Source: Octopus sinensis (taxonomy: Eukaryota). Taken from it: a stretch of DNA of 64,000 bases. A model generated the notes under the pieces. The model saw only the letters and a list, made by a program, of their open reading frames with translations, was not told where the DNA came from and searched no databases. The stretch spans positions 1 to 64,000 of the forward strand of contig NC_043011.1 in the NCBI RefSeq assembly GCF_006345805.1, written 5' to 3'. The position numbers and the translations under genes are program-made. The first letter of the stretch is position 1, and each line of letters starts with the position of its first letter. Positions 12,317-60,364 of the stretch are shown here, in pieces.

Positions 12317-13598
12317 TTAGGTTGGCAACTAAGTTCCCGCCGGTTTTTTTTTAATTTAAACCTTTTAAAAGGTTTACTGAAAAATAGCAATTAATTAATC
12401 AATAATGTATTCACCCTTGTTGTTTACAACTTTTTCCCAACGTTCAACAAAATTTTCAATACCTTGTTGGTAAAAATCACCCAATTTCGACTCGAAAAAT
12501 TGATCCAACCAAGCTCTCAATTCTGTATCAGTATTGAACAAAACTCCGCACATGGCATTTGAAAGAGATCGAAAGAGGTGGAAATCCGTTGGTGCCAAAT
12601 CAGGAGAGTACGGCAGGTGTAGCAGCAATTCCGAGCCATGCGTTTGAATGGCTTCCTTGATCATATTGGCGAAATGAGGGCGGGTGTTGTCGCGCAGCAG
12701 AAGAACTCCGTGCTGACGATTAGATATTTTCTCTTGAATAGCCGTGTTTAGTCGTTCCATCTGTTGAACATAGAGTTTCGCGTTGACCGTTTGGTTCCGT
12801 TCAAGCAATTCGTAATGGATAATCCCTTCCCAGTCCCACCATACACACAACATCGTTTTACGCGGATGAAGATCTTGTTTCACGCGTGGTGTCGCTTGTT
12901 TACTGAGGCTAAACCATTCCTTACGCTGCTTCATATTGATGTACAGGCACAATTTTTCGTCGCCAGCAACGATTCGGTAAATAAATCGTTGCTTGTGTCC
13001 ATGAGTTGAGCGATGACGAGCAAGCAACCCAGCGAAGATTGTGGCTCGTTGATTTTTGCTGTTGTCACTTAAAACATGCGGAACCCATGCTCCAAACTTC
13101 TGAACCTTTCCCATCGAGTGAAGATGCTTCTCTATAGCGGTGTTGGAGCATTCCATTTCCTCTACCAGTTTCTTTGTCGTTTAACGAAAATGTTCGTGCA
13201 AAAGTCAGTTTAATGGCTTTTCAGGGAATTCAACTGGACGGCCAGAACGAGGTGTGTCTTTGAGGTCAAAATTTCCATTTTTCAACTTGGCATACCAATC
13301 ACGAGCGCTTCTTTCAGCTATGGCACCCTCTCCATACGCAACACAAATGTCGCGAGCAGCTTTTGCGGCCTTAGAACCTTGATTAAAAGCAAAAAGGAGG
13401 TGTCGAAAATGCTCGTATTTCTTAATTTGACATTCCATTTTAATGATCTGAAAATAAACAAAAATTAACTACAATTACCAAAATAGATTCCAAAATGATT
13501 CAAAAATAGAATTCTCGAAAAAGTAGATTTAAAAAATTTAAAAACGCAATAAATTCCAAACTTAAAAAAAAACGAAGCGAACTTAGTTGCCAACCTAA
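12317..13598 (-). mobile_element. Full-length mariner (DD34D) transposon, 1282 bp, inactive
   Basis: TIRs ttaggttggcaactaagttc at both ends, flanked by TA (12315-16 and 13599-600). The transposase is one reading frame with two internal stops. Confidence 0.95.
12395..13438 (-). pseudogene. mariner transposase, 347 codons, two in-frame nonsense codons
   Basis: Motifs WVPHVL, AGDEKL, DNTRPH and PYSPDLAPTD, with 34 residues between the second and third D. ORFs 13205..13438 and 12395..13156 share a frame, joined by KPLN*LLHEHFR*TTKKL. Confidence 0.92.
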
Positions 13599-27220: not shown

Positions 27221-28095
27221 CAGAGGTCGGACAAAATAAAAGAAACACCTTAAAATTTCAAACAAATTTATTTCAAAATGGGTCAGGACCGCATTTGGCA
27301 GTAGTTACAGCTAGAATTGTACGAGGTATGGACTCGTACAAAGTTTGAATTGTTTCCAAAGGAATCTTTGTCCATTCTTCAGCTAAAACAGTCTCCAGTT
27401 CTTGTAGTGAGGATGATGGAGGATATCGACTCCTTACTTGTTTTTCTAAAACGCACCATAAACATTCAATAATATTGAAATCTGGGGACTGTGGTGACCA
27501 GATAAGATGTTCAAATTCATTCGAATGTTCCTCGTGCCATTCAGTAACAAATCCAGCTGTCGGAATTGGTGCATTATCATCCTGAAAGATTGTTTTTGCC
27601 TCCGGAAACAGTTCCGCAACCATAAGATGAATTTGATCAGATAAAATGCTTAAGTAGTCTTGACTATTAATTCTGCCATGAAAGGAAACCATTGGACCAG
27701 CGGATTTCCAAGATATAGCCCCCCACCAGATCATCACAGATCCTCTTCCATGTATAACAGTTGAAAGAAGGCAGTCTGGATCAAATGCTTCCTTTGGCTA
27801 TGTCCACACGTATACTCGGCTGGGTGGTCGGAAATAAGGTAACGGATGACTCGTCCGAGAAAACATTCTTCCACCGCTCTAGGGACCTATTCTGTAGGTT
27901 TTTACTCCACTCTATACGCTGTGCAACGTCTGTTTTTGAAAGTAGGGATTTTCTGATTGCAGCCCTCCGGTCAAATCCGGCTTTTTGTAACTCCCGGCGA
28001 ACAGTTTTTGTAGAAACTGGGTTCTCGAGGTGGTTATTAAACTTTGCAGTAATTTTGGGAGGTGTACTTTTGTAATCCTTTCCAACAATTCGCGA
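27221..28095 (-). mobile_element. Tc1-like transposon with DD36E spacing (Incomer-type), 5'-truncated
   Basis: TA then TIR-like cagaggtcggacaaaata at 27221. Translation VSTKTVRRELQK...FSDESSVTLFPT and FQDDNAPIPTAGFVTEWHEEHSNEFEHLIWSPQSPDFNIIE gives 36 residues between D and E. Frameshifted. Confidence 0.85.
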
Positions 28096-28178
28096 TATAT
28101 ATATATATATATATATTATACATGCATGCATACATACATACATACATACATACATGCATACATACATACATACATACA

Positions 28179-28209
<31 letters not shown>

Positions 28210-30117: not shown

Positions 30118-32153
30118 GGAGTGTCATCTGGAGCAAAGACAAGTAGCACAAGAAGGATGTTGAATGGTTGCAAGAACTGAAACAAACAGAAGTCTGTCCA
30201 AAACAGAGAGAACTATTCATTTCAGTTAGGGAAGTGATGGAAATCAGCAAAGAAATGAGCAACTGGAAAGCCCCGGGACCAGATGGAGTTTAAGGCTACT
30301 GGATCGAAAGATTTGGTGAACTCCTGATAGAAAAAACTGTACTCAGAGACTGCAAGAGGAGGAAGAGTAACTTAGCCACGTCATGGATCGACTATCGTAA
30401 GGCTTACAATATGATCCCACATTCTTGGATTATGGAGAGTATGAACCTGTTTGGGATTGCATCGGTTGTTGAGCGATTGCTTGAAAAAAGTATGGCGAAT
30501 TGGAGGACGGACCTGACAGTATACAGAAGAAGTTTGGGGACAGTAGAAATTAGGAGGGACATCTTCCAAGGAGATTGCCTGTCCACGCTGATCTTTGCAC
30601 TGTGCTTGATACCACTAGCACTGATTCTGAGGAAAGCAAAAGCTGGATATGTATTCAAAAGCCACCAACAAATAGTCAACCATTTGTTATTCATGGATGA
30701 CCTCAAACTTTATGGTAAAGGTGAAGCCCAATTCAGTTCCCTCGTTGATACAGTGTATACCTTCAGTGCTGATATAAGAATGGAGTTCGGACTGAAAAAG
30801 TGTGGTGAGTTAGTCTTGAAAAGAGGCAAAATCAAATTTATGGACGGGCTAACGATACCGTCGGGGGAGGTTATGAAGCAGATAGAAGAGACAAGCTATA
30901 AGTACTTGGGGATTTTGGAAATGGATAAATTAATAGAGAAAGAAATGACAGAAAAATTTAAGGTGGAGTACTTACGCAGACTGAGACTGATCCTTAAGTC
31001 TAAATTAAACGGACGGAATAAGATCGAAGCTATCAACACCTGGGCGATTTCACTCTTTAGATATGGAGCAGAGGTAAACAGCTTAGGCAGAAAGACAAGG
31101 AAGTTGCTAACTAGATATGGTCACTCAGCCCAAAATGTGACATATACCAAGAAAAAGAGGGGGATATGACTTATTGGATGTGAACACAGCATTAGAGCAG
31201 AAGAAAACAACATAGCATGGTATGTAAAAATGCCACAGAACCGCTATTATCAGAAGAAGGTCAGGCTTGTGTAGGATGAAAGACTGCAAAGATAAAGCAC
31301 TATACAAGAAATTGAAAACGAATGAAACTGAAAATAGGTGGTTAAAGAAAAGAATGCCTGATCAATTACATAGGGCAGTTGAAGGTAAGAAAGACAGAGA
31401 AAAAAGATGGCTGTGGATGACTAAAATAGATTTAAAACCGGAAACAGAGGCTCCTATCTGTGCTGCCCAAGAGCAAGCACTAACAATAAACTACATAAAA
31501 TACAGAATAGACAACAAATCAGAAAGTGATAAGTGCAGAATCTGTGGACAAAACGGTGAAACCGTATGGCATATTTCCAGTCAATATACGCCACTAGCCC
31601 AGAAAGAACATGAGAGACGCCACGGCAATATAGCCAGGCTTGTCCATTGGACACTTTGCAACAAGTATGGACTTGACAGAGCAAAACATTGGTGCGACCA
31701 CCTGAAAGCATTGCCGAAAATAGAAATGCAAATATCCTATGGGATTTTATGATTCAGTGCGATCGTGAGTTGGAGAATAGGAAGCCGGACGTAGTGTTAA
31801 TTGAGAAAGAAAACAAGCTATGCTGGATCATAGACATAGCATGCCCAGCTGACTACAAGGTATGCGATAAGGAAGAAAGAAAAGTCGAATGATATGACAG
31901 GTTAGCTTGGGAAGTTATGCAGTTGTGGTCAATGAAAAAGGTGGTAGTAGTACCAATAATTGTCAGAGGCCTGGGAATAGTGGAAGAAATAGGGGCTGCA
32001 ATAAGAGTGGAGCACTTGCAGAAAACAGCACTGCTTGGAACTGCTCGAATACTCCGGAAGTTGCTCGAAAAATAAGAGGTGTTACCTTAGTTCCTGTAGT
32101 GAACACGCTGACACTGTAGTACATCTCCAGCGTAGAAGCTGTGCAAGGGCAAT
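30118..32153 (+). mobile_element. R4/Dong-type non-LTR retrotransposon (RT + CCHC-like + restriction-like endonuclease), 5'-truncated and decayed
   Basis: WKAPGPDG, DYRKAYNMIPHSW, IFQGDCLS, LFMDDLKLY (RT), CRICGQNGETVWHI (zinc knuckle), RKPDVVL...IIDIACP (PD..D endonuclease). Ends in (TAA)n. Confidence 0.88.
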
Positions 32154-37439: not shown

Positions 37440-38090
37440 AAACTTAGACATGTTTCGACCAAAGATTGATCCAGGCCATGACTAACTTAACAGCACCACC
37501 TGATAGGATTATCTAAATCCATTTTAATATAAGTTTTGTGGTATCATGGTCCATTCAAGTAGTGAGTCCTTGCTGGGTGAGTTGTATCCAGGTATGATTG
37601 GCTTATCTGGTGTTCGTTGAATGAATTTGTCCAGATTCCGTTTAAAGATGATGGGGTCATTTCCCTCTTTAATCAGTTTTGGGACAATGTTAAACAGAGA
37701 GGGCTGGTTGAGGAAAAGAAATTGTGTCACAGTGTGCCTATATGTTGTGATCCTGAATTGGGCAAGAGACTTATGGCCCATAATTCCTGCCTTACATGAA
37801 CCCTGAAGCTAATGTTCAGGTCGTTTGGGCAATGCTGGCGGTATATTCTCCACATCGTGCAAATGATGTACCGCTCGTGGCGGCACTGGAGAGAGTAGAG
37901 TTTCAAGGCTTTAAGGCGGCCCCAGTAACCGAGATCAGTCATGCCCTTAATTCGTTTGGAGAATGCCCTCTGGGGTGATTCAATTTTTGAGATGTATTGT
38001 ATGGGGAGACCACAAGGGGCAGCAGTATTCGAGTCATGGCCGTACAAAGGAAGAGAAAAGTGGAATGATGACACCTTGTTCTCTGGACCG
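37440..38090 (-). mobile_element. CR1/L2-like LINE 3' fragment
   Basis: ISKIESPQRAFSKRIKGMTDLGYWGRLKALKLYSLQCRHERY...FKRNLDKF resembles the C-terminal domain of CR1-group ORF2. Frameshifted. Confidence 0.75.
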
Positions 38091-41649: not shown

Positions 41650-42111
41650 CACATAATGGTGGTGGTTTTGGCGATGACGACGATGATTACGGTAACAAAG
41701 AGGATGATGATGATGGTGATGATGAGGATGAGGGTGGTGGTGGTGGTGATAATGAAGAGGAGGATAAGGATGAAGAGTAGAAGAATGATGTGGAGTAGGA
41801 GGAGGATGAAACGCCGGTGGCGATGTTGTTGATGATTATGATAGTGATGGTGATGAAGATGATGATGATGATGACGATGGCTGATCGGTGTTGGTGGTGG
41901 TGATGGTAGTGTTGGTAGCAGTGTTGAGGAGATGATGACGAGGAGGAGGACGAGGACGAGGAGGAAGGGGAGGAAGGGGAGGAAGGGGAGGAAGGGGAGG
42001 AGGAGGAAATGGAGAACGATCGCGTCAGTGACGATGTCGTTGTTCTTGATCATGATAATGATAACGATGATGATGATGGTGATAACAATGATGATGATGA
42101 TGATGATGATG

Positions 42112-42142
<31 letters not shown>

Positions 42143-42155
42143 CGATGACGATGAC

Positions 42156-42187
<32 letters not shown>

Positions 42188-42239
42188 CGATGATGACGAT
42201 GATGATGATGATGATGATGATGATGACGAGGACGACGAC

Positions 42240-42283
<44 letters not shown>

Positions 42284-42284
42284 C

Positions 42285-42322
<38 letters not shown>

Positions 42323-42461
42323 CGACGACGACGATGATGTGATGATGATGATGATGATGATGATGACGATGATGATGATGATGATGATGATGACGATGAT
42401 GATGATGATGACGATGATGATGATGATGATGATGACGATGATGATGATGTTGATGATGACA

Positions 42462-42492
<31 letters not shown>

Positions 42493-42541
42493 CGATGACG
42501 ATGACGATGATGATGATGATGATGATGATGACGATGATGAC

Positions 42542-42579
<38 letters not shown>

Positions 42580-42589
42580 CGATGATGAC

Positions 42590-42628
<39 letters not shown>

Positions 42629-42636
42629 GGTGATGG

Positions 42637-42675
<39 letters not shown>

Positions 42676-42751
42676 CGATGATGATGGTGATGATGATGAT
42701 GATGATGACGATGATGATGACGATGACGATGATGATGATGATGACGACGAC

Positions 42752-42786
<35 letters not shown>

Positions 42787-42859
42787 CGATGATGATGATG
42801 ATGATGATGACGACGATGATGATGATGATGACGATTACGATGATGATGATGATGACGAC

Positions 42860-42891
<32 letters not shown>

Positions 42892-42970
42892 CGAGGACGA
42901 TGAAGATGACGATGAAGATGATGATTTTGATGATAATGATGATGATGGTGATGACGGTGATGACGAAGCA
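41650..42970. repeat. 1.3-kb (GAT/GAC/GAG)n field
   Basis: Seen directly; ORFs 41604..42971, 41932..42342 and 42009..42977 are poly-H/M/D. Confidence 0.95.
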
Positions 42971-45184: not shown

Positions 45185-45230
<46 letters not shown>

Positions 45231-45239
45231 AATATATAT

Positions 45240-45278
<39 letters not shown>

Positions 45279-45469
45279 CAACAAGGATATCCAAATGTAG
45301 TGTATTACAATCGTTTCATACTACTTCATTTTATTAAACAATGTAAGTATTACATCAGTTTTAAAATATAGAGCAATCTTTAGTCGCATATGGAAATTTT
45401 TAATTAAATTGACAATACTCATTTTTATACTAATTCGTTCATTCTTTCAAATGTTTTAGTCATGTCACT

Positions 45470-46572: not shown

Positions 46573-47458
46573 GCCTTTCAGACATCAGATGATGGAGTGT
46601 TTCTGCTCAGTAGAAGTGACGGGAAACTGTTCAATCTCTCGCGCCTGCGTGCCAAGACCAAAATCAGAAGCGTCCTAATCAAGGAGATGCTATTTGCTGA
46701 TGATGCCGCTTTGGTATCTAACACAGAAGAAGCCCTACAAAGGCTCATCAACTGTTTTGGGCAAGCATGTAACGACTTTGGCTTAGTTATCAGGAAGACC
46801 AACATCTTGGGTCAGGCTACATCGGACATCCCAAACATACATATTGGAGACCACAGATTACATGAGGTGGAGAAGTTTATCTATCTTGGCTCTACCGTCA
46901 CCTACAACCTATCCCTTGACACTGAGCTCAATATACGCATTGGCAAGGCAGCTGCTGTGATGGCCCAACTCTGCAAACAGGCATGGGACAACAATAAGCT
47001 GACCAAGACCACAAAAATGAAGATTTACCAGGCATGTGTACTTAGCACTCTACTGTATGGAAGTGAGACTTGGACGCCATACACACGCCAAGAGCGTCGC
47101 CTCAATATCTTTCACCTGTTCTGCCTCCGAAAATCCTTGGCATCAAGTGGCAGAATCATGTCCCCAACAATGATGTCCTCAAGCAAGCAGGAATACAAGC
47201 ATGTTTGCACTCCTCCCACAAAGACGTATGAGATGGCTTGGATATGTTAGCCGTATGGAAGATGGCAGAATCCCCAAGGACATACTCTACGGAGAGCTTG
47301 CTAGGGGCACTAGGTCTGTGGGAAGACCGTTCTTACGTTACAAGGATGTTTGCAAAAGGGACATGAAGGCCTGCAACATCAATATTAGCAGTTGGGAAGC
47401 AATTGCCAGCAACCGTGGTGATTGGCGACGTACCGTAAAAGAGGGAATACAAAGGAGT

Positions 47459-47509
<51 letters not shown>

Positions 47510-47728
47510 AATGGAAAGACAAGAAAAGACGTCAACAAGAAACTATGGCATTACAACCAGCCAGGAACAGTCTTCACTACATTTGCGGCACCTGCCAGAG
47601 GGAGTGTTTGTCCAGGATAGGACTACACTGCCACAGCAGGAAATGTATCAGGACATGAAATGTAAAAGCCGGACTAGATTATTTTAGGCGCAACTCCATT
47701 ATCTCCCGGGACAAAAAGTATGCCAAAA
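46573..47728 (+). mobile_element. RTE-clade LINE 3' fragment
   Basis: RSDGKLFNLSRLRAKTK, EMLFADDAAL, FIYLGS, STLLYGSETW, RWLGYVSRMEDGRIPKDILYGEL, GRPFLRYKDVCKRDMK. One frameshift at ~47130 and a (GA)n insertion at 47461-47504. Confidence 0.9.
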
Positions 47729-50692: not shown

Positions 50693-50728
<36 letters not shown>

Positions 50729-50768
50729 TTAAACACATATATATGCATATATACGTATCCATACATAT

Positions 50769-50805
<37 letters not shown>

Positions 50806-51095
50806 TATATGTATAGATACATATATGTGTGTATATATATATATGTATACACAAACACACAGATATATACATATATATAAATATATATATACATTTTTAC
50901 ATACAAAAATGTTATATACACACACACAAACATATATGCATATATAATATACGTAATATATATATTTATATATGAATACTCACATTTACATTCACACGTA
51001 TATATATATATATCGAATCCAAACAAAGAACAAACAATAAAAAACAACGCGAGAGCGTGGTGCGAGTACTATATGTATAAATATATATGTATATA

Positions 51096-51142
<47 letters not shown>

Positions 51143-51367
51143 GCACATATATATATATATATATAGATAGATACATAGATGGATGGATAGATAGATAAAT
51201 AGATAGATATGCATGTATACATATCTATAAATATGAATGTATGCATCATGGGATATGTATGTATGTATCTATCTGGTTATATATATATATATGTATACAC
51301 ACGCACACACATAAACATACACACCTATACATTTATATTCATATGTATTTACATATGTATACATATG

Positions 51368-51425
<58 letters not shown>

Positions 51426-55309: not shown

Positions 55310-55981
55310 CATACACACACACATACATGCACTTACATGCATACACACATTCATACATACATACACACATACATACATACATACACACATACATACATAC
55401 AATACATACATACATACATACATACATACCATACATACATACATACATACATACATACATACATACATACATACATACACACATACATACACACACACAT
55501 ACATACAAACACACATAGATACATACAATACATACATACATACATACATACATACAATACATACATACATACATACACACATACATACATACATACATAC
55601 ATACATACATACAATACATACATACATACATACATGCAAACATACATGAATGCATGCATACATACACACATACATGCATACATACATACACACATACATA
55701 CGTACACACATATGTACATGCATACATAACTACATATGTATATATGTACATACATACATATATACATACATATATACATGCACATATACATACATATGTA
55801 CATACATACATACATACATACAAATAAAAATACCCTGTTGTTGATGTTGACATTCCAATGAAGGAGCCTTGGATCTAGGTTAGAAACCAGCTCTTTCCCT
55901 ATTGGTAAGAAATCTTAAAATAAAACCGAATGACACACACATTCATACATACATACATACATACATACATACATACATACA

Positions 55982-56012
<31 letters not shown>

Positions 56013-56250
56013 GTACATATATACATGCATGTATACTTACATAATACATACATACATATGTACTTACATACATACATACATACATACATATAAAATACAT
56101 ACATAATACATACATGCATACATACATACATACATACACACATACAAACATGCACTTACATGCATTCATACATACATACAGACAAACAGACAGAAAGACA
56201 GGCATACAAACAAACACACGCACATACACACACACACACACGCGTATATA
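55310..56250. repeat. (TACA)n microsatellite field
   Basis: Seen directly. Confidence 0.95.
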
Positions 56251-56709: not shown

Positions 56710-56740
<31 letters not shown>

Positions 56741-56884
56741 AGCAATAAAGATTCAAGTTAATTTTAAAAAATTTACTTGAATATGGTACCTAACTTAGAT
56801 GCACCAAAAAAAACTATACTGATTTAACAATACAGTAATGTGGGGTGATTATAAGCGAGAAAGAAGCAACAAGAATGGATAGGT

Positions 56885-56975
56885 TTTTAGTACGATCGTT
56901 TCATACAAGGACAGGTTTTATTAAAAGTTGCAAAGATTACAGCATATAAACGAGTCCCGTACTCATCAGCTAAAA
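56885..56975 (-). ncRNA. Type I hammerhead ribozyme, copy A
   Basis: Reverse complement of copy B: UUUUAG CUGAUGA GUAC...GUAU GAAAC GAUC GUA CUAAAA. Confidence 0.8.
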
Positions 56976-57599
56976 ACATGTAAGTTCTCTAGACATCCTA
57001 GTGTTTGAGGCTATACTCATGAAGTAATGTAGATAATTAAACAGATTTCTAAAGTTCATTAAAGTTCTTTAAAGATGATGTACAGTCTTATCACAGAATT
57101 TTAAAAAAGTTTTGATAGCATCACAGAGAAGGTGACCTAATCCATATGAATTTCCATAGATATGAAGAGGGATTATATACTCACAGAAGACAAATTTATC
57201 CATTGTTAATTACAACGAGGTGGGTCTCAATTCTGCTTATTAGCATTACAGAGAGGGTGAATTAATCCTTTGTATATATGCACAGATTCTGTGCATATAT
57301 ACAAAGGATTAATTCACCCTCTCTGTAATGCTAATAAGCAGGAATTGAGACCCACCTCGTTGTAATTACAATGGATAAATTTGTCTTCTGTGAGTATATA
57401 ATCCCTCTTCATATCTATGGAAATTCATATGGATTAGGTCACCTTCTCTGTGATGCTATCAAAACTTTTTTAAAATTCTGTGATAAGACTGTACATCATC
57501 TTTAAAGAACTTTAATGAACTTTAGAAATCTGTTTAATTATCTACATTACTTCATGAGTATAGCCTCAAACACTAGGATGTCTAGAGAACTTACATGTA

Positions 57600-57690
57600 T
57601 TTTAGCTGATGAGTACGGGACTCGTTTATATGCTGTAATCTTTGCAACTTTTAATAAAACCTGTCCTTGTATGAAACGATCGTACTAAAA
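57600..57690 (+). ncRNA. Type I hammerhead ribozyme, copy B
   Basis: Helix I UUUUAG/CUAAAA, CUGAUGA at 57606-12, long helix II (GUAC/GUAU, GGAC/GUCC plus AU-rich stem), GAAA at 57673-76, palindromic ACGAUCGU helix III, predicted cut after A57684. Confidence 0.8.
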
Positions 57691-57776
57691 ACCTATCCAT
57701 TCTTGTTGCTTCTTTCTCGTATATATATATATATATATATATATATACGAGAAAGAAGCAACAAGAATGGATAGGT

Positions 57777-57867
57777 TTTTAGTACAATCGTTTCATACAA
57801 GGACAGGCTTTATTAAATGTTGCAAAAATTACAGCATATAAACGTGTCCCGTACTCATCAGCTAAAA
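57777..57867 (-). ncRNA. Type I hammerhead ribozyme, copy C
   Basis: Reverse complement of copy D; helix III region ACGAUUGU. Confidence 0.78.
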
Positions 57868-58173
57868 TACATGTGAGTTCTCTAGACATCCTAGTGGTTG
57901 AGGCTATACTCATGAAGTAATGTAGATAATTAAGTAACATAAACAGATTTCCAAAGTTCATTAAAGTTCTTTAAAGATGATTTACAGTCTTATCACAGAA
58001 TTTTAAAAAAGTTTTAATAGCATCACAGAGAAGGTGACCTAATCCATAGTGCACATATGAATTTCCAGAGATATAAGGAGGGATTACATACTCACAGACG
58101 ACAAATTTATCCATTGTTAATCACAACGAGGTGGGTCTCAATTCCTGCTTATTAGCATTACAGAGAGGGTGAA

Positions 58174-58264
58174 TTTTAGCTGATGAGTACGGGACACGTT
58201 TATATGCTGTAATTTTTGCAACATTTAATAAAGCCTGTCCTTGTATGAAACGATTGTACTAAAA
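58174..58264 (+). ncRNA. Type I hammerhead ribozyme, copy D
   Basis: UUUUAG CUGAUGA GUACGGGACA...UGUCCUUGUAU GAAAC GAUU GUA CUAAAA; predicted cut after A58258. Confidence 0.78.
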
Positions 58265-58410
58265 ACCTATCCATTCTTGTTGCTTCTTTCTCGCTTATAA
58301 TCACCCCACATTACTGTATTGTTAAAACAGTATAGTTTTTTTTGGTGCATCTAAGTTAGGTACCATATTCAAGTAAATTCATTTAAATTAACTTGAATCT
58401 TTATTGCTTT

Positions 58411-58456
<46 letters not shown>

Positions 58457-58911: not shown

Positions 58912-59243
58912 AAGGGTAAAGACCCCCTTCGGTCATGAATGACCATGGGATTGCACCTAGAAAGTTACCTTCCTAGACACAAGTCCGGGCAAGGTTGTTT
59001 ATGGAAGGCCAGCAGTCGCCCATGCATACCTGCCTCCCCTCTCCACGCCACCAGTGTTATCCAAGGGAAAGACAAAGGTCGATACAGCTTGGCACCAGTG
59101 ACGTCGCAACTCATTTCTACAGCTGAGTGAACTGGAGCAACGTGAAATAAAGTGCCTTGCTCAAGAACACAACACGCAGCCCGGTCCGGGATTCGAGCTC
59201 ACAACCTCACGATCGTAAGCTCGACGCTCTAACCACTGAGCCA

Positions 59244-59884: not shown

Positions 59885-60205
59885 CTCGGCTCAGCGATAA
59901 AAGTTTCGGGCCTACAATTGGGAGGTTTTGAGTTCGATTCGCCGGCCAAGCTGTGTATTGTGTTCTTGAGGAAGCCACCTTATTTCACATTGCTCCAGTT
60001 CACTCAGCTGTGAATATGTGTTGTGACGTCACTGGTGCCAAGCTGTATCGGCCCCTTTGCCTTTCCCTTGGATAACATCGATGGCGTGGAAGGGGATGGG
60101 TGGTATGAATGGGCATCTGCTGGTCTTCCACAAACAGCCTTACCCAGACTCGTGCCTTGGAAGGGAACGTTCTAGGTGTAATATCACCATCATTCGTGAC
60201 TGAAG
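59885..60205 (+). mobile_element. SINE family E
   Basis: gagttcgattcgccgg, gtgttcttgagg..cacttatttcacattgctccagttcactcagctgt, gacgtcactggtgccaagctgtatcg. Confidence 0.75.
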
Positions 60206-60364
60206 GGGTCTTTTACTTTTACCTATGTATAGACGAAAGCTTTTTAAGGGCTGGATACCTAAATTTATCACCAAGGGCTTTATTAATGTCTATGGAATAT
60301 TGTAAATGTGTTTGAGGTCGCAGGAGAGGATTTCCAAACATTGTACGCTTATTAGACCCAAGGC

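What the first reader, a model, noticed from the sequence alone, without database searches (positions are those of the whole stretch)
56741..58408. Four hammerhead ribozymes in alternating orientation inside a nested fold-back cassette inserted in (TA)n
Seen: a 1.67-kb non-coding cassette built as forward, inverted, (TA)n, forward, inverted arms. It includes an 864-bp near-perfect palindrome (56856-57719, one-base spacer at 57287). Each arm carries a complete type I hammerhead with a 6-bp helix I, an intact CUGAUGA/GAAA core, an unusually long helix II and a self-complementary helix III (ACGAUCGU in A/B, ACGAUUGU in C/D). A/B and C/D share different private variants, so two related copies each seem to have produced their own inverted mate. 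Each strand has two same-sense ribozymes: cuts after 57684 and 58258 would release a 574-nt RNA on +, and the minus pair would release ~892 nt. The B and D helix III segments can pair with each other over 8 bp. Established: Penelope-like elements and retrozymes carry minimal type I hammerheads with palindromic helix III that act as dimers, and Penelope insertions often have inverted partial ends. Inference: this may be a non-autonomous, bidirectionally self-cleaving retrozyme-like unit, or a long-dsRNA source for ADAR editing or small RNAs, in which fold-back competes with ribozyme folding.
Basis: partly seen in the sequence, partly recalled or inferred. Interest (0 to 1): 0.88.

Follow-up and report, generated by a model that had tools for sequence, protein, structure and literature searches.

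The report
Head-to-head hammerhead retroelement insertions
Two young, mirror-image insertions of a roughly 550-base retroelement that carries a hammerhead ribozyme motif sit side by side in one TA microsatellite; the four motifs are real, but the alternating layout looks like the usual by-product of how Penelope-like and retrozyme-type elements insert, not a special RNA device.

Summary
The described anatomy is present at the stated coordinates. Four copies of a 91-nt type I hammerhead (HHR) motif alternate in orientation between (TA)n tracts. All core nucleotides are intact. Rfam Hammerhead_1 is the best family match, but it scores below the gathering threshold. A relaxed HHR descriptor found nothing in 400 shuffled windows.

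The cassette is not nested. All 16 informative substitutions split A=B from C=D. It is therefore two adjacent events, each a head-to-head inverted pair of 5'-truncated copies with the 3' ends facing outward onto (TA)n. In each pair one arm carries a 118-121-nt 3' tail. The other arm stops at the same base, 35 nt past the cleavage site.

This matches published hallmarks of Penelope-like element (PLE) insertions: HHR-bearing repeats, an adjacent inverted 5'-truncated copy, a tail at one end only, and an AT/(TA)n target. No reverse transcriptase gene and no tandem array are present. No further family members could be retrieved, so the PLE/retrozyme link rests on this pattern match.

In read-through transcripts of either strand, every HHR nucleotide is predicted to pair with its antisense mate. 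A bidirectionally self-cleaving unit is therefore unlikely, and long dsRNA is a plausible by-product. I rate it an ordinary new member of a known kind.

The parts
56710..56737 (.). Left (TA)14 tract that abuts the 3' end of arm A
56738..57286 (-). Arm A: long-form copy of the unit, 549 nt, sense on the minus strand. The 3' tail is 56738-56855 (118 nt).
56885..56975 (-). HHR motif A. Predicted cleavage on the minus strand is after the A opposite T56891.
57287..57287 (.). Single-base spacer at the head-to-head junction of insertion 1. Both arms reach the same 5' position of the unit.
57288..57719 (+). Arm B: short-form copy, 432 nt, identical to A apart from three 1-nt indels. It ends ...CTTTCTCG, 35 nt past the cleavage site, and has no tail.
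57600..57690 (+). HHR motif B. Predicted cleavage is after A57684. Rfam Hammerhead_1: 22.0 bits, E=0.0018.
57720..57747 (.). Central (TA)14, the piece of microsatellite left between the two insertions. It is the same length as the left tract.
57748..58175 (-). Arm C: short-form copy, 428 nt, sense on the minus strand. It starts at the same ...CTTTCTCG end as B and lacks the first 23 nt of the unit. It shows about 4% substitutions versus A/B and two 9-nt insertions.
57777..57867 (-). HHR motif C. Predicted cleavage on the minus strand is after the A opposite T57783.
58174..58414 (+). Arm D: 5'-truncated long-form copy that begins at the 5' edge of the HHR. It is identical to C where they overlap. 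The 3' tail is 58294-58414 (121 nt). The junction with C at 58170-58175 shows 2-3 nt of microhomology.
58174..58264 (+). HHR motif D. Predicted cleavage is after A58258. Rfam Hammerhead_1: 18.4 bits, E=0.027.
58415..58448 (.). Right (TA)17 tract that abuts the 3' end of arm D
45277..45357 (-). Possible old, degenerate 3'-terminal relic of the same or a related family. It runs from mid helix II to ...CTTGTTGCT, and its 3' end again abuts a (TA)n tract (45243-45277).
   Evidence: nhmmer E=0.0084, marginal

Best explanation
The cassette is two independent, mirror-oriented insertions of one family of non-coding, HHR-bearing retroelement into a single (TA)n microsatellite. The unit is about 550 nt in its long form and 31.5% G+C. 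It is of the Penelope-like-element / non-LTR-retrozyme kind.

Each insertion is a head-to-head inverted pair.
- Shown by the anatomy: both 3' ends face outward and abut (TA)n. The 5' ends meet in the middle, at a 1-nt spacer in insertion 1 and at a 2-3-nt microhomology in insertion 2. One arm starts at a distal 3' site and so carries a 118-121-nt tail. The other starts at a proximal site, ...CTTTCTCG.
- Inferred from the PLE literature: an element-encoded or borrowed RT/GIY-YIG endonuclease cuts AT-rich DNA on both strands. It primes cDNA from both 3'-OH ends at two alternative internal start sites on the RNA. The two cDNAs are then joined.

The arms were copied from RNA that the ribozyme had not cleaved, because no arm ends at the cleavage site.

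The HHRs are inherited cargo. By analogy, they serve to process multimeric transcripts of master copies, as dimers through the palindromic helix III, and are possibly protein-assisted.

At this locus the HHRs need have no function. Read-through RNA would fold into 431-bp and roughly 124-bp perfect hairpins that lock up all four motifs.
For: HHR motif:
- All core positions are present, with a 6-bp helix I and a palindromic helix III.
- The descriptor gives 0 hits in 400 shuffled windows.
- Rfam Hammerhead_1 is the best of 4227 families on the isolated motif, matched over the full model 1-45.

Two events, each making its own inverted mate:
- A versus B shows 0 mismatches in 430 matched nt. C and D are identical where they overlap. 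A/B versus C/D shows about 4% substitutions plus two 9-nt indels.
- 16 of 16 informative sites split A=B from C(=D).

Retroelement-type ends:
- The 5' ends are variable (unit positions 1, 1, 24 and about 312).
- The outer termini are not conserved (GCTCTT versus GCTTTTTGAA).

Target:
- All four 3' ends, and that of the possible relic at 45277-45357, abut perfect (TA)>=14 tracts. Perfect (TA)>=10 tracts cover only 2.6% of the window.

Literature match:
- PLE insertions are 5'-truncated, often with an adjacent inverted 5'-truncated copy. A tail is often present at only one end. They show a (TA)n/microsatellite bias (PMC8557442).
- The PLE protein PAc cleaves and extends both DNA strands. It starts RT at two internal sites whose interval is the tail, and it uses uncleaved RNA (PMC11167929).
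- Minimal type I HHRs lie in PLE repeats, and HHR pairs 100-700 bp apart on opposite strands have been seen in Schistosoma (PMC4209133).
- Non-LTR retrozymes are pLTR-derived, with consensus lengths of 51-972 bp, and have dispersed monomers (bioRxiv 10.64898/2026.07.22.740005).
Against: - No RT/GIY-YIG ORF lies in the cassette or its flanks. The only RT fragments in the window, at 30.4-31.8 kb and 46.6-47.6 kb, match Pfam RVT_1, and I judged them LINE-like by eye; they lie far away.
- No head-to-tail repeat is present.
- No further family member was retrieved from JGI metagenomes, IMG/VR, GTDB genomes or the protein collection. The family assignment therefore rests on a pattern match to the literature, with no covariation data.
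- The tail is 118-121 nt, against 30-40 nt in described PLEs.
- The HHR has G10.1-U11.1 instead of the usually conserved G-C. It lacks the bulged base typical of PLE minimal HHRs (PMC4209133).
- The Rfam score is below the gathering threshold.
- The HHR fold is not the predicted MFE of the isolated motif.
- The (TA)n tracts could be element-borne tails rather than the target.
Confidence: 0.65

Rival explanations
1. DNA-level origin. An HHR-bearing repeat next to a hairpin-prone (TA)n tract was turned into palindromes by fold-back replication, template switching or break repair. Alternatively, the cassette is a fold-back or MITE-like DNA transposon with long inverted arms inserted at TA.
For: There are three palindrome centres, at 57287, 57733/4 and about 58172. 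The outer inverted arms are 266 nt long and 95% complementary, and are flanked by TA. The perfect identity within each pair is also what recent DNA-level inverted duplication or intrapalindrome gene conversion would give.
Against: The outermost termini differ between the two ends (GCTCTT versus GCTTTTTGAA). That is unlike TIR transposons, whose tips are their best-conserved part. The B and C arms end at exactly the same unit position although they come from sources about 4% apart. That points to a defined start site rather than random breakage. The tail is present in one arm of each pair only. The possible relic at 45277-45357 is a solo 3' fragment next to (TA)n.
Confidence: 0.12
2. A SINE-like element mobilised by a LINE, with twin-priming-type 5' inversions and its own (TA)n microsatellite tail. 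The HHR would be a passenger motif, as in Schistosoma Sm-alpha (that comparison is recalled from memory).
For: The inverted-plus-forward architecture with 5' truncation is also what L1 twin priming produces. RT ORF fragments that look LINE-like are present in the window. Every copy is followed by (TA)n.
Against: The unit shows no similarity to any other sequence in the window, including those RT-fragment regions. It has no tRNA-like head or B box. The two alternative 3' start sites and the one-sided tail are described as PLE-specific (PMC11167929). (TA)n tracts are abundant in the window without the element (54 perfect tracts). Pre-existing arrays are therefore the simpler reading.
Confidence: 0.1
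3. Assembly artefact. The two perfect palindromes (A/B and C/D) come from fold-back or chimeric long reads. The only differences between A and B are three 1-nt indels, which could be consensus errors.
For: A versus B shows 0 mismatches with only single-base indels, two of them in short homopolymer runs. PLE-type structures are known to trouble assemblies (PMC8557442).
Against: A simple mirrored read would carry B on into the tail and the left flank. Instead B stops at the same unit position as C, from which it differs by about 4%. Unique sequence continues on both sides. Two independent artefacts with the same biological architecture are unlikely.
Confidence: 0.08
4. The cassette is a working, bidirectionally self-cleaving, retrozyme-like unit that releases 574-nt (+) and 892-nt (-) RNAs, possibly as circles.
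For: Two same-sense complete HHR motifs lie on each strand at those spacings. The helix III segments of B and D are mutually complementary over 8 bp.
Against: There is no head-to-tail repeat. In each strand's read-through transcript every HHR is preceded by its own antisense copy, and all 91 nt of each are predicted to be paired to it. The 574-nt product would itself contain C antisense to D. The HHR fold is not favoured even in isolation, and cofolding does not give the extended helix III dimer. PLE minimal HHRs cleave poorly in vitro (PMC4209133, PMC11167929).
Confidence: 0.05

Closest known systems
Complex tandem/inverted insertions of Penelope-like elements (Penelope/Poseidon, Neptune, Naiad; PMC8557442, PMC11167929)
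   Same: An HHR in the repeat region. 5' truncation. An inverted 5'-truncated copy joined head-to-head. An extra tail at only one end of an insertion. Two alternative 3' start sites. An AT-rich/(TA)n target. Arms copied from uncleaved RNA.
   Different: No RT/GIY-YIG ORF and no direct pLTR tandem here. The tail is 118-121 nt rather than 30-40 nt. The HHR has G10.1-U11.1 and no bulged base after A9. No autonomous partner was identified.
Metazoan non-LTR retrozymes (PMC7229834; bioRxiv 10.64898/2026.07.22.740005)
   Same: Non-coding and low in G+C (31.5%). A type I HHR with a 6-bp helix I and a short palindromic helix III suited to dimeric action. A unit length within the reported 51-972 bp range. 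Dispersed, non-tandem monomer copies of such families are known.
   Different: Retrozymes are defined by head-to-tail tandem repeats that yield unit-length linear and circular RNAs. Here the copies are head-to-head, so HHR-to-HHR products would be mostly self-complementary. Expression and circles are untested.
Rfam RF00163 Hammerhead_1 and the minimal HHRs of PLEs (PMC4209133)
   Same: CUGAUGA and GAAA cores, a GUA cleavage triplet, helix I of 6 bp, and a helix III of ACGAUCGU against the model consensus ACGcgCGU. HHR pairs on opposite strands 100-700 bp apart were reported in Schistosoma.
   Different: A 54-nt insertion in helix II. Scores of 22.0 and 18.4 bits, below the gathering score of 34.
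L1 twin-priming inversions (recalled from general knowledge, not tested here)
   Same: One insertion made of an inverted and a forward segment of the same RNA, joined internally with microhomology. It arises because both target-site 3' ends prime cDNA synthesis.
   Different: L1 uses a poly(A) tail and an APE endonuclease. Here there is no poly(A), there are two defined 3' start sites, and the RNA carries an HHR.

Membership tests
Hammerhead ribozyme, type I (Rfam RF00163) | Conserved core C3-U4-G5-A6-N7-G8-A9, G12-A13-A14, the A15.1-U16.1 pair and H17 at the cleavage site | tested here: met
   CUGAUGA ... GAAA ... GUA is identical in all four copies. 10.1-11.1 is G-U rather than the usual G-C.
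Hammerhead ribozyme, type I (Rfam RF00163) | Three helices in type I topology: helix I open, helices II and III closed | tested here: met
   Helix I is 6 bp (8 bp in A). Helix II has 7 contiguous pairs from the core when G-U is allowed, and is 60 nt in total. Helix III is a minimal palindrome.
Hammerhead ribozyme, type I (Rfam RF00163) | Score at or above the Rfam gathering threshold (34 bits) | tested here: not met
   No hit at the gathering threshold or in a 1.95-kb E-value search. Searching the 111-nt motif alone gave 22.0 bits, E=0.0018 and 18.4 bits, E=0.027. It was the best-scoring family for B (22.0 bits); for D it had the lowest E-value but was marginally outscored by a CRISPR repeat model (18.5 vs 18.4 bits).
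Hammerhead ribozyme, type I (Rfam RF00163) | Covariation that supports the helices across diverged copies | tested here: inconclusive
   Only two sequence variants exist. The 5 differences fall in distal helix II and the helix III loop, and none is a compensatory pair. No outside copies were found.
Hammerhead ribozyme, type I (Rfam RF00163) | Self-cleavage activity | not testable with these tools
   Needs in vitro transcription. Thermodynamic prediction does not favour the HHR fold.
Penelope-like element (autonomous) | A single ORF with a telomerase-like RT and a GIY-YIG endonuclease | tested here: not met
   ORFs in the cassette are 60 aa or shorter. No ORF in the flanks looked RT/EN-like, but these were inspected by eye only, not scanned. 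The RT fragments elsewhere in the window match Pfam RVT_1 and I judged them LINE-like.
Penelope-like element (insertion anatomy) | An HHR within the terminal repeat region | tested here: met
   The HHR ends 35 nt before the short 3' end and about 155 nt before the long 3' end of each arm.
Penelope-like element (insertion anatomy) | An inverted 5'-truncated copy adjacent to the forward copy | tested here: met
   A/B and C/D are head-to-head pairs with 5' ends at unit positions 1, 1, 24 and about 312.
Penelope-like element (insertion anatomy) | A tail extension present at one end only | tested here: met
   In each pair one arm has a 118-121-nt tail and the other stops at ...CTTTCTCG. The tail is longer than the published 30-40 bp.
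Penelope-like element (insertion anatomy) | Direct partial tandem (pLTR) | tested here: not met
   There are no head-to-tail copies. Direct repeats are separated by an inverted copy.
Penelope-like element (insertion anatomy) | AT-rich / (TA)n target preference | tested here: met
   All four 3' ends abut perfect (TA)14-17 tracts. Perfect (TA)>=10 tracts make up 2.6% of the window. An element-borne tail cannot be excluded.
Metazoan non-LTR retrozyme | Head-to-tail tandem repeats, each with a type I HHR | tested here: not met
   Only head-to-head pairs are present.
Metazoan non-LTR retrozyme | Non-coding, low G+C, unit of a few hundred bp | tested here: met
   31.5% G+C, a unit of about 432-549 nt, and no ORF longer than 60 aa.
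Metazoan non-LTR retrozyme | Expressed as unit-length linear and circular RNAs | not testable with these tools
   No transcriptome data are available.
TIR / fold-back DNA transposon (MITE-like) | Conserved terminal inverted repeat tips and a fixed-length TSD | tested here: not met
   The outer tips differ (AAGAGC... versus TTCAAAAAGC... when read inward). The TSD cannot be determined inside (TA)n.

The most novel reading that the evidence does not exclude
The locus is not just insertion debris but a used hairpin-RNA gene. Read-through transcription would yield 431-bp and roughly 124-bp perfect dsRNA, a substrate for Dicer or ADAR. Co-transcriptional hammerhead folding would compete with zippering to the antisense arm. 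The ribozymes would then act as a kinetic switch between cleaved single-stranded RNA and long dsRNA.
Probability: 0.05. Interest if true: 0.6.

Novelty: new member of a known kind. Interest (0 to 1): 0.25.

Why it matters
The mechanism by which PLEs make tandem and inverted insertions is still only partly worked out.

This locus is a clean natural example of two features. First, both ends of the target appear to have primed cDNA. Second, two 3' start sites about 120 nt apart were used within single events. Three of the four arms reach within 23 nt of the same 5' end, which hints at a discrete non-autonomous RNA of about 550 nt. No arm ends at the ribozyme cleavage site. That agrees with the in vitro finding that uncleaved RNA is the insertion substrate.

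For genome annotation, the locus shows that clusters of alternating hammerhead motifs can be insertion by-products and need not be ribozyme devices.

It does not open a new question by itself.

Tried and rejected
- Rfam at the gathering threshold on the whole window gave nothing. An E-value search on 1.95 kb gave only spurious miRNA and hairpin matches caused by the palindromes. The hammerhead model appeared only when the 111-nt motif was searched alone.
- My first in-window pattern used too short a helix II gap and found nothing.
- Exact-pattern scans gave either no hit or hits that are chance matches, with no CTGATGA upstream and unrelated context. These covered JGI metagenomes, IMG/VR and GTDB genomes, and were checked.
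- I translated the 57/60-aa ORF that overlaps the HHR and searched the 5.8-billion-protein collection, hoping to catch ORFs called on eukaryotic contigs. It found nothing.
- I tried to identify the host through the mariner transposase ORF. The best matches were 77-86% identical, on TARA/ENA contigs that share only the transposon. The host remains unidentified.
I replaced it with a stop-to-stop ORF listing, which showed nothing that looked RT/EN-like on reading through it.
- I rejected the nested-insertion model on the arm identities.
- I rejected a tRNA-derived SINE head: no tRNA was found and no B box lies in the unit.
Full report
OBSERVATION

The region reads as described. Between (TA)n tracts lie four copies of one unit in alternating orientation.
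- Arm A: 56738-57286, sense on the minus strand, 549 nt.
- Arm B: 57288-57719, plus strand, 432 nt.
- Arm C: 57748-58175, minus strand, 428 nt.
- Arm D: about 58174-58414, plus strand.

A single base (57287) lies between A and B. (TA)14 (57720-57747) lies between B and C. The outer flanks are (TA)14 (56710-56737) and (TA)17 (58415-58448). The A/B palindrome has no mismatch and three 1-nt indels over 430 matched bases.

The string CTGATGAGTACGGGAC occurs exactly four times, twice per strand. The predicted cleavage sites are 574 nt apart on the plus strand (57684 and 58258) and 892 nt apart on the minus strand (57783 and 56891).

IS THE HAMMERHEAD REAL?

Each copy reads UUUUAG-CUGAUGA-(60 nt helix II)-GAAA-CGAUCG-UA|CUAAAA. 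All core positions are present. Helix I is 6 bp. The cleavage triplet is GUA. Helix III is an 8-nt self-complementary segment, ACGAUCGU in A/B and ACGAUUGU in C/D.

I wrote a relaxed type I / minimal-HHR descriptor that was not tuned to this sequence. It finds only these four sites in the window. It finds none in 400 dinucleotide-preserving shuffles of the window.

Rfam gives no hit at the gathering threshold. A 1.95-kb E-value search returned only hairpin artefacts. When the 111-nt motif alone is searched, Hammerhead_1 (RF00163) matches over its full length. For B it is the best of 4227 families, at 22.0 bits and E=0.0018. For D it scores 18.4 bits with the lowest E-value (0.027), although a CRISPR repeat model scored marginally higher in bits. 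Both lie below the gathering score of 34 bits. The loss comes from a 54-nt insertion in helix II and a non-consensus proximal helix II.

There are three weaknesses.
- 10.1-11.1 is G-U rather than the usually conserved G-C. The bulged base typical of PLE minimal HHRs is absent (PMC4209133).
- The HHR fold is 2.0 kcal/mol (C/D) to 5.3 kcal/mol (A/B) above the predicted MFE of the isolated motif. Cofolding does not give the extended helix III dimer.
- The only two sequence variants differ at five sites, in distal helix II and the helix III loop. There is no covariation evidence.

I conclude that the motif is a genuine hammerhead-family sequence. Its activity is unproven.

ARCHITECTURE: TWO SIDE-BY-SIDE EVENTS, NOT A NESTED ONE

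All 16 informative substitution sites split A=B from C(=D). A/B and C/D differ by about 4% substitutions and two 9-nt indels. A nested model, with an outer A/D pair and an inner B/C pair, predicts the opposite pattern.

Read in the sense of the ribozyme, each event is the same object: an inverted short-form arm joined head-to-head to a forward long-form arm. Insertion 1 (A+B) lies in minus orientation. Insertion 2 (C+D) lies in plus orientation.

In every arm the 3' end faces outward onto (TA)n. The long-form arms (A and D) carry an extra 118-121-nt tail. That tail ends in non-identical tips, GCTCTT and GCTTTTTGAA. The short-form arms (B and C) come from sources about 4% apart, yet both end at exactly ...CTTTCTCG, 35 nt past the cleavage site.

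The 5' ends vary, at unit positions 1, 1, 24 and about 312. The joints are a 1-nt spacer in insertion 1 and a 2-3-nt microhomology in insertion 2.

Fixed 3' start points, variable 5' ends and non-conserved outer tips are the signature of target-primed reverse transcription. They are not the signature of a TIR transposon.

No arm ends at the ribozyme cleavage site, so the templates were uncleaved RNA.

Three of the four arms reach within 23 nt of the same 5' position. This suggests, but does not prove, that the unit is a discrete RNA of about 550 nt and not a random piece of a longer element.

CONTEXT

The unit is 31.5% G+C and has no ORF above 60 aa. No other intact copy lies in the window.

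A marginal profile hit (nhmmer E=0.0084) at 45277-45357 on the minus strand looks like an old 3'-terminal relic. It conserves GUAUGAAACGAUUGUA, and its 3' end again abuts a (TA)n tract.

Perfect (TA)>=10 tracts cover 2.6% of the window. Having every 3' end on one is therefore not chance.

The window is a very microsatellite-rich animal sequence with mariner and Tc1 relics and reverse-transcriptase ORF fragments that look LINE-like. No ORF near the cassette looked RT/GIY-YIG-like; those ORFs were read by eye, not scanned. The host was not identified.

COMPARISON WITH WHAT IS KNOWN

Craig et al. (PMC8557442) describe PLE insertions as follows:
- highly 5'-truncated;
- often with an inverted 5'-truncated copy immediately adjacent;
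- with a tail often present at one end only;
- with a bias for (TA)n and other microsatellites;
- with HHRs in the pLTRs of canonical clades.

Frangieh et al. (PMC11167929) show that a purified PLE protein has these properties:
- it cleaves AT-rich DNA on both strands and extends both;
- it starts reverse transcription at two internal RNA sites whose interval is the genomic tail;
- it uses uncleaved RNA, with an HHR that is protein-assisted and dispensable for insertion.

Cervera and de la Pena (PMC4209133) found minimal type I HHRs with palindromic helix III in PLE repeats. They noted HHR pairs 100-700 bp apart on opposite strands, and low activity in vitro.

Metazoan non-LTR retrozymes are tandem, non-coding, low-GC repeats with type I HHRs (PMC7229834). 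A recent preprint argues that they are pLTR-derived non-autonomous PLE sequences, with consensus lengths of 51-972 bp and dispersed monomers (bioRxiv 10.64898/2026.07.22.740005).

The cassette fits the PLE insertion anatomy point for point, with three exceptions. There is no ORF. There is no direct tandem. The tail is roughly three to four times longer than described.

It fails the defining feature of a retrozyme locus, which is head-to-tail repeats.

WHAT THE LOCUS WOULD DO IF TRANSCRIBED

For the whole cassette on either strand, the predicted MFE is -1199.5 kcal/mol. All 91 nt of each HHR are paired with the antisense mate, which in each case lies upstream in the transcript. In the RNA spanning the B and D ribozymes, which contains the putative 574-nt plus-strand product, D is again locked to C (88 of its 91 nt).

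The reading of a 'bidirectionally self-cleaving unit' is therefore unlikely. A long-dsRNA by-product is physically plausible but untested.

VERDICT

Best explanation (confidence about 0.65): two mirror-oriented, head-to-head insertions of an HHR-bearing, PLE-type non-autonomous retroelement into one (TA)n array.

Rivals:
- DNA-level palindrome formation or a fold-back transposon (0.12);
- a LINE-mobilised SINE-like element with twin priming (0.10);
- an assembly artefact of the perfect palindromes (0.08);
- a functional bidirectional retrozyme (0.05).

It is a new member of a known kind, and of modest interest.

Noticed in passing
window 45277-45357 (-), next to (TA)n at 45189-45277: An 81-nt stretch aligns marginally (nhmmer E=0.0084; blastn 74% over 57 nt) with the distal helix II to short 3' end part of the unit. 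It conserves GTATGAAACGATTGTA and again ends on a (TA)n tract. It may be an old 5'-truncated copy of the same or a related family.
   Followed up: partly
window 56710-56737 and 57720-57747: The TA tracts on either side of insertion 1 are both exactly (TA)14, 28 bp each. This could be a long target-site duplication, but inside a microsatellite that cannot be told from coincidence.
   Followed up: no
window 12395-13156 (-): A 253-aa mariner-type transposase ORF (Pfam Transposase_1, E=1.8e-23). Its closest relatives are 77-86% identical and lie on eukaryote-like contigs in TARA Oceans and other ENA metagenome assemblies. Only the transposon is shared (89% nt identity with L001).
   Followed up: partly
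window 27273-28203 (-): A Tc1-like transposase relic split over two ORFs (HTH_Tnp_Tc3_2 and DDE_3), with an (ATAC)n array at its 5' side.
   Followed up: no
window 30411-31752 (+) and 46597-47620 (+); also 37727-38074 (-): Reverse-transcriptase ORF fragments that match Pfam RVT_1 and look LINE-like. None shows any similarity to the hammerhead-bearing unit.
   Followed up: partly
window 58968-59198 (-) and 59932-60072 (+), also about 60003-60212: A repeated element occurs in inverted orientation just right of the cassette. Its translated stretches are shared (...CVLEQGTLFHVAPVHSAVEMSCDVTGAKLYRPL...). It is probably a SINE-like repeat and is unrelated to the cassette.
   Followed up: no
whole window, e.g. 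42047-42963 (TGA)306, 55310-56240 (CATA)230, 50702-51402 (TA)n: Microsatellite density is extreme: 101 TRF rows at score 80 or above, and 54 perfect (TA)>=10 tracts in 64 kb. This produces many long spurious low-complexity ORFs.
   Followed up: no
unit positions 19-46 and 144-171 (e.g. window 57233-57263 versus 57108-57138); tail 56751-56782: The unit contains a short internal direct repeat (28-31 nt, about 70-86% identical, spacing 125 nt). Its 3' tail holds a hairpin-forming inverted repeat (TTCAAGT...ACTTGAA) close to the distal 3' end. That hairpin could be an RT recognition or start structure.
   Followed up: no
L012 899-917 and L013 5113-5131 (Pedobacter / Sphingobacteriaceae genomes): A 22-nt exact match to TTTTAGCTGATGAGTACGG plus flanking bases occurs in two related bacterial genomes. 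There is no further similarity to the unit, so it is most likely chance or an unrelated motif.
   Followed up: partly
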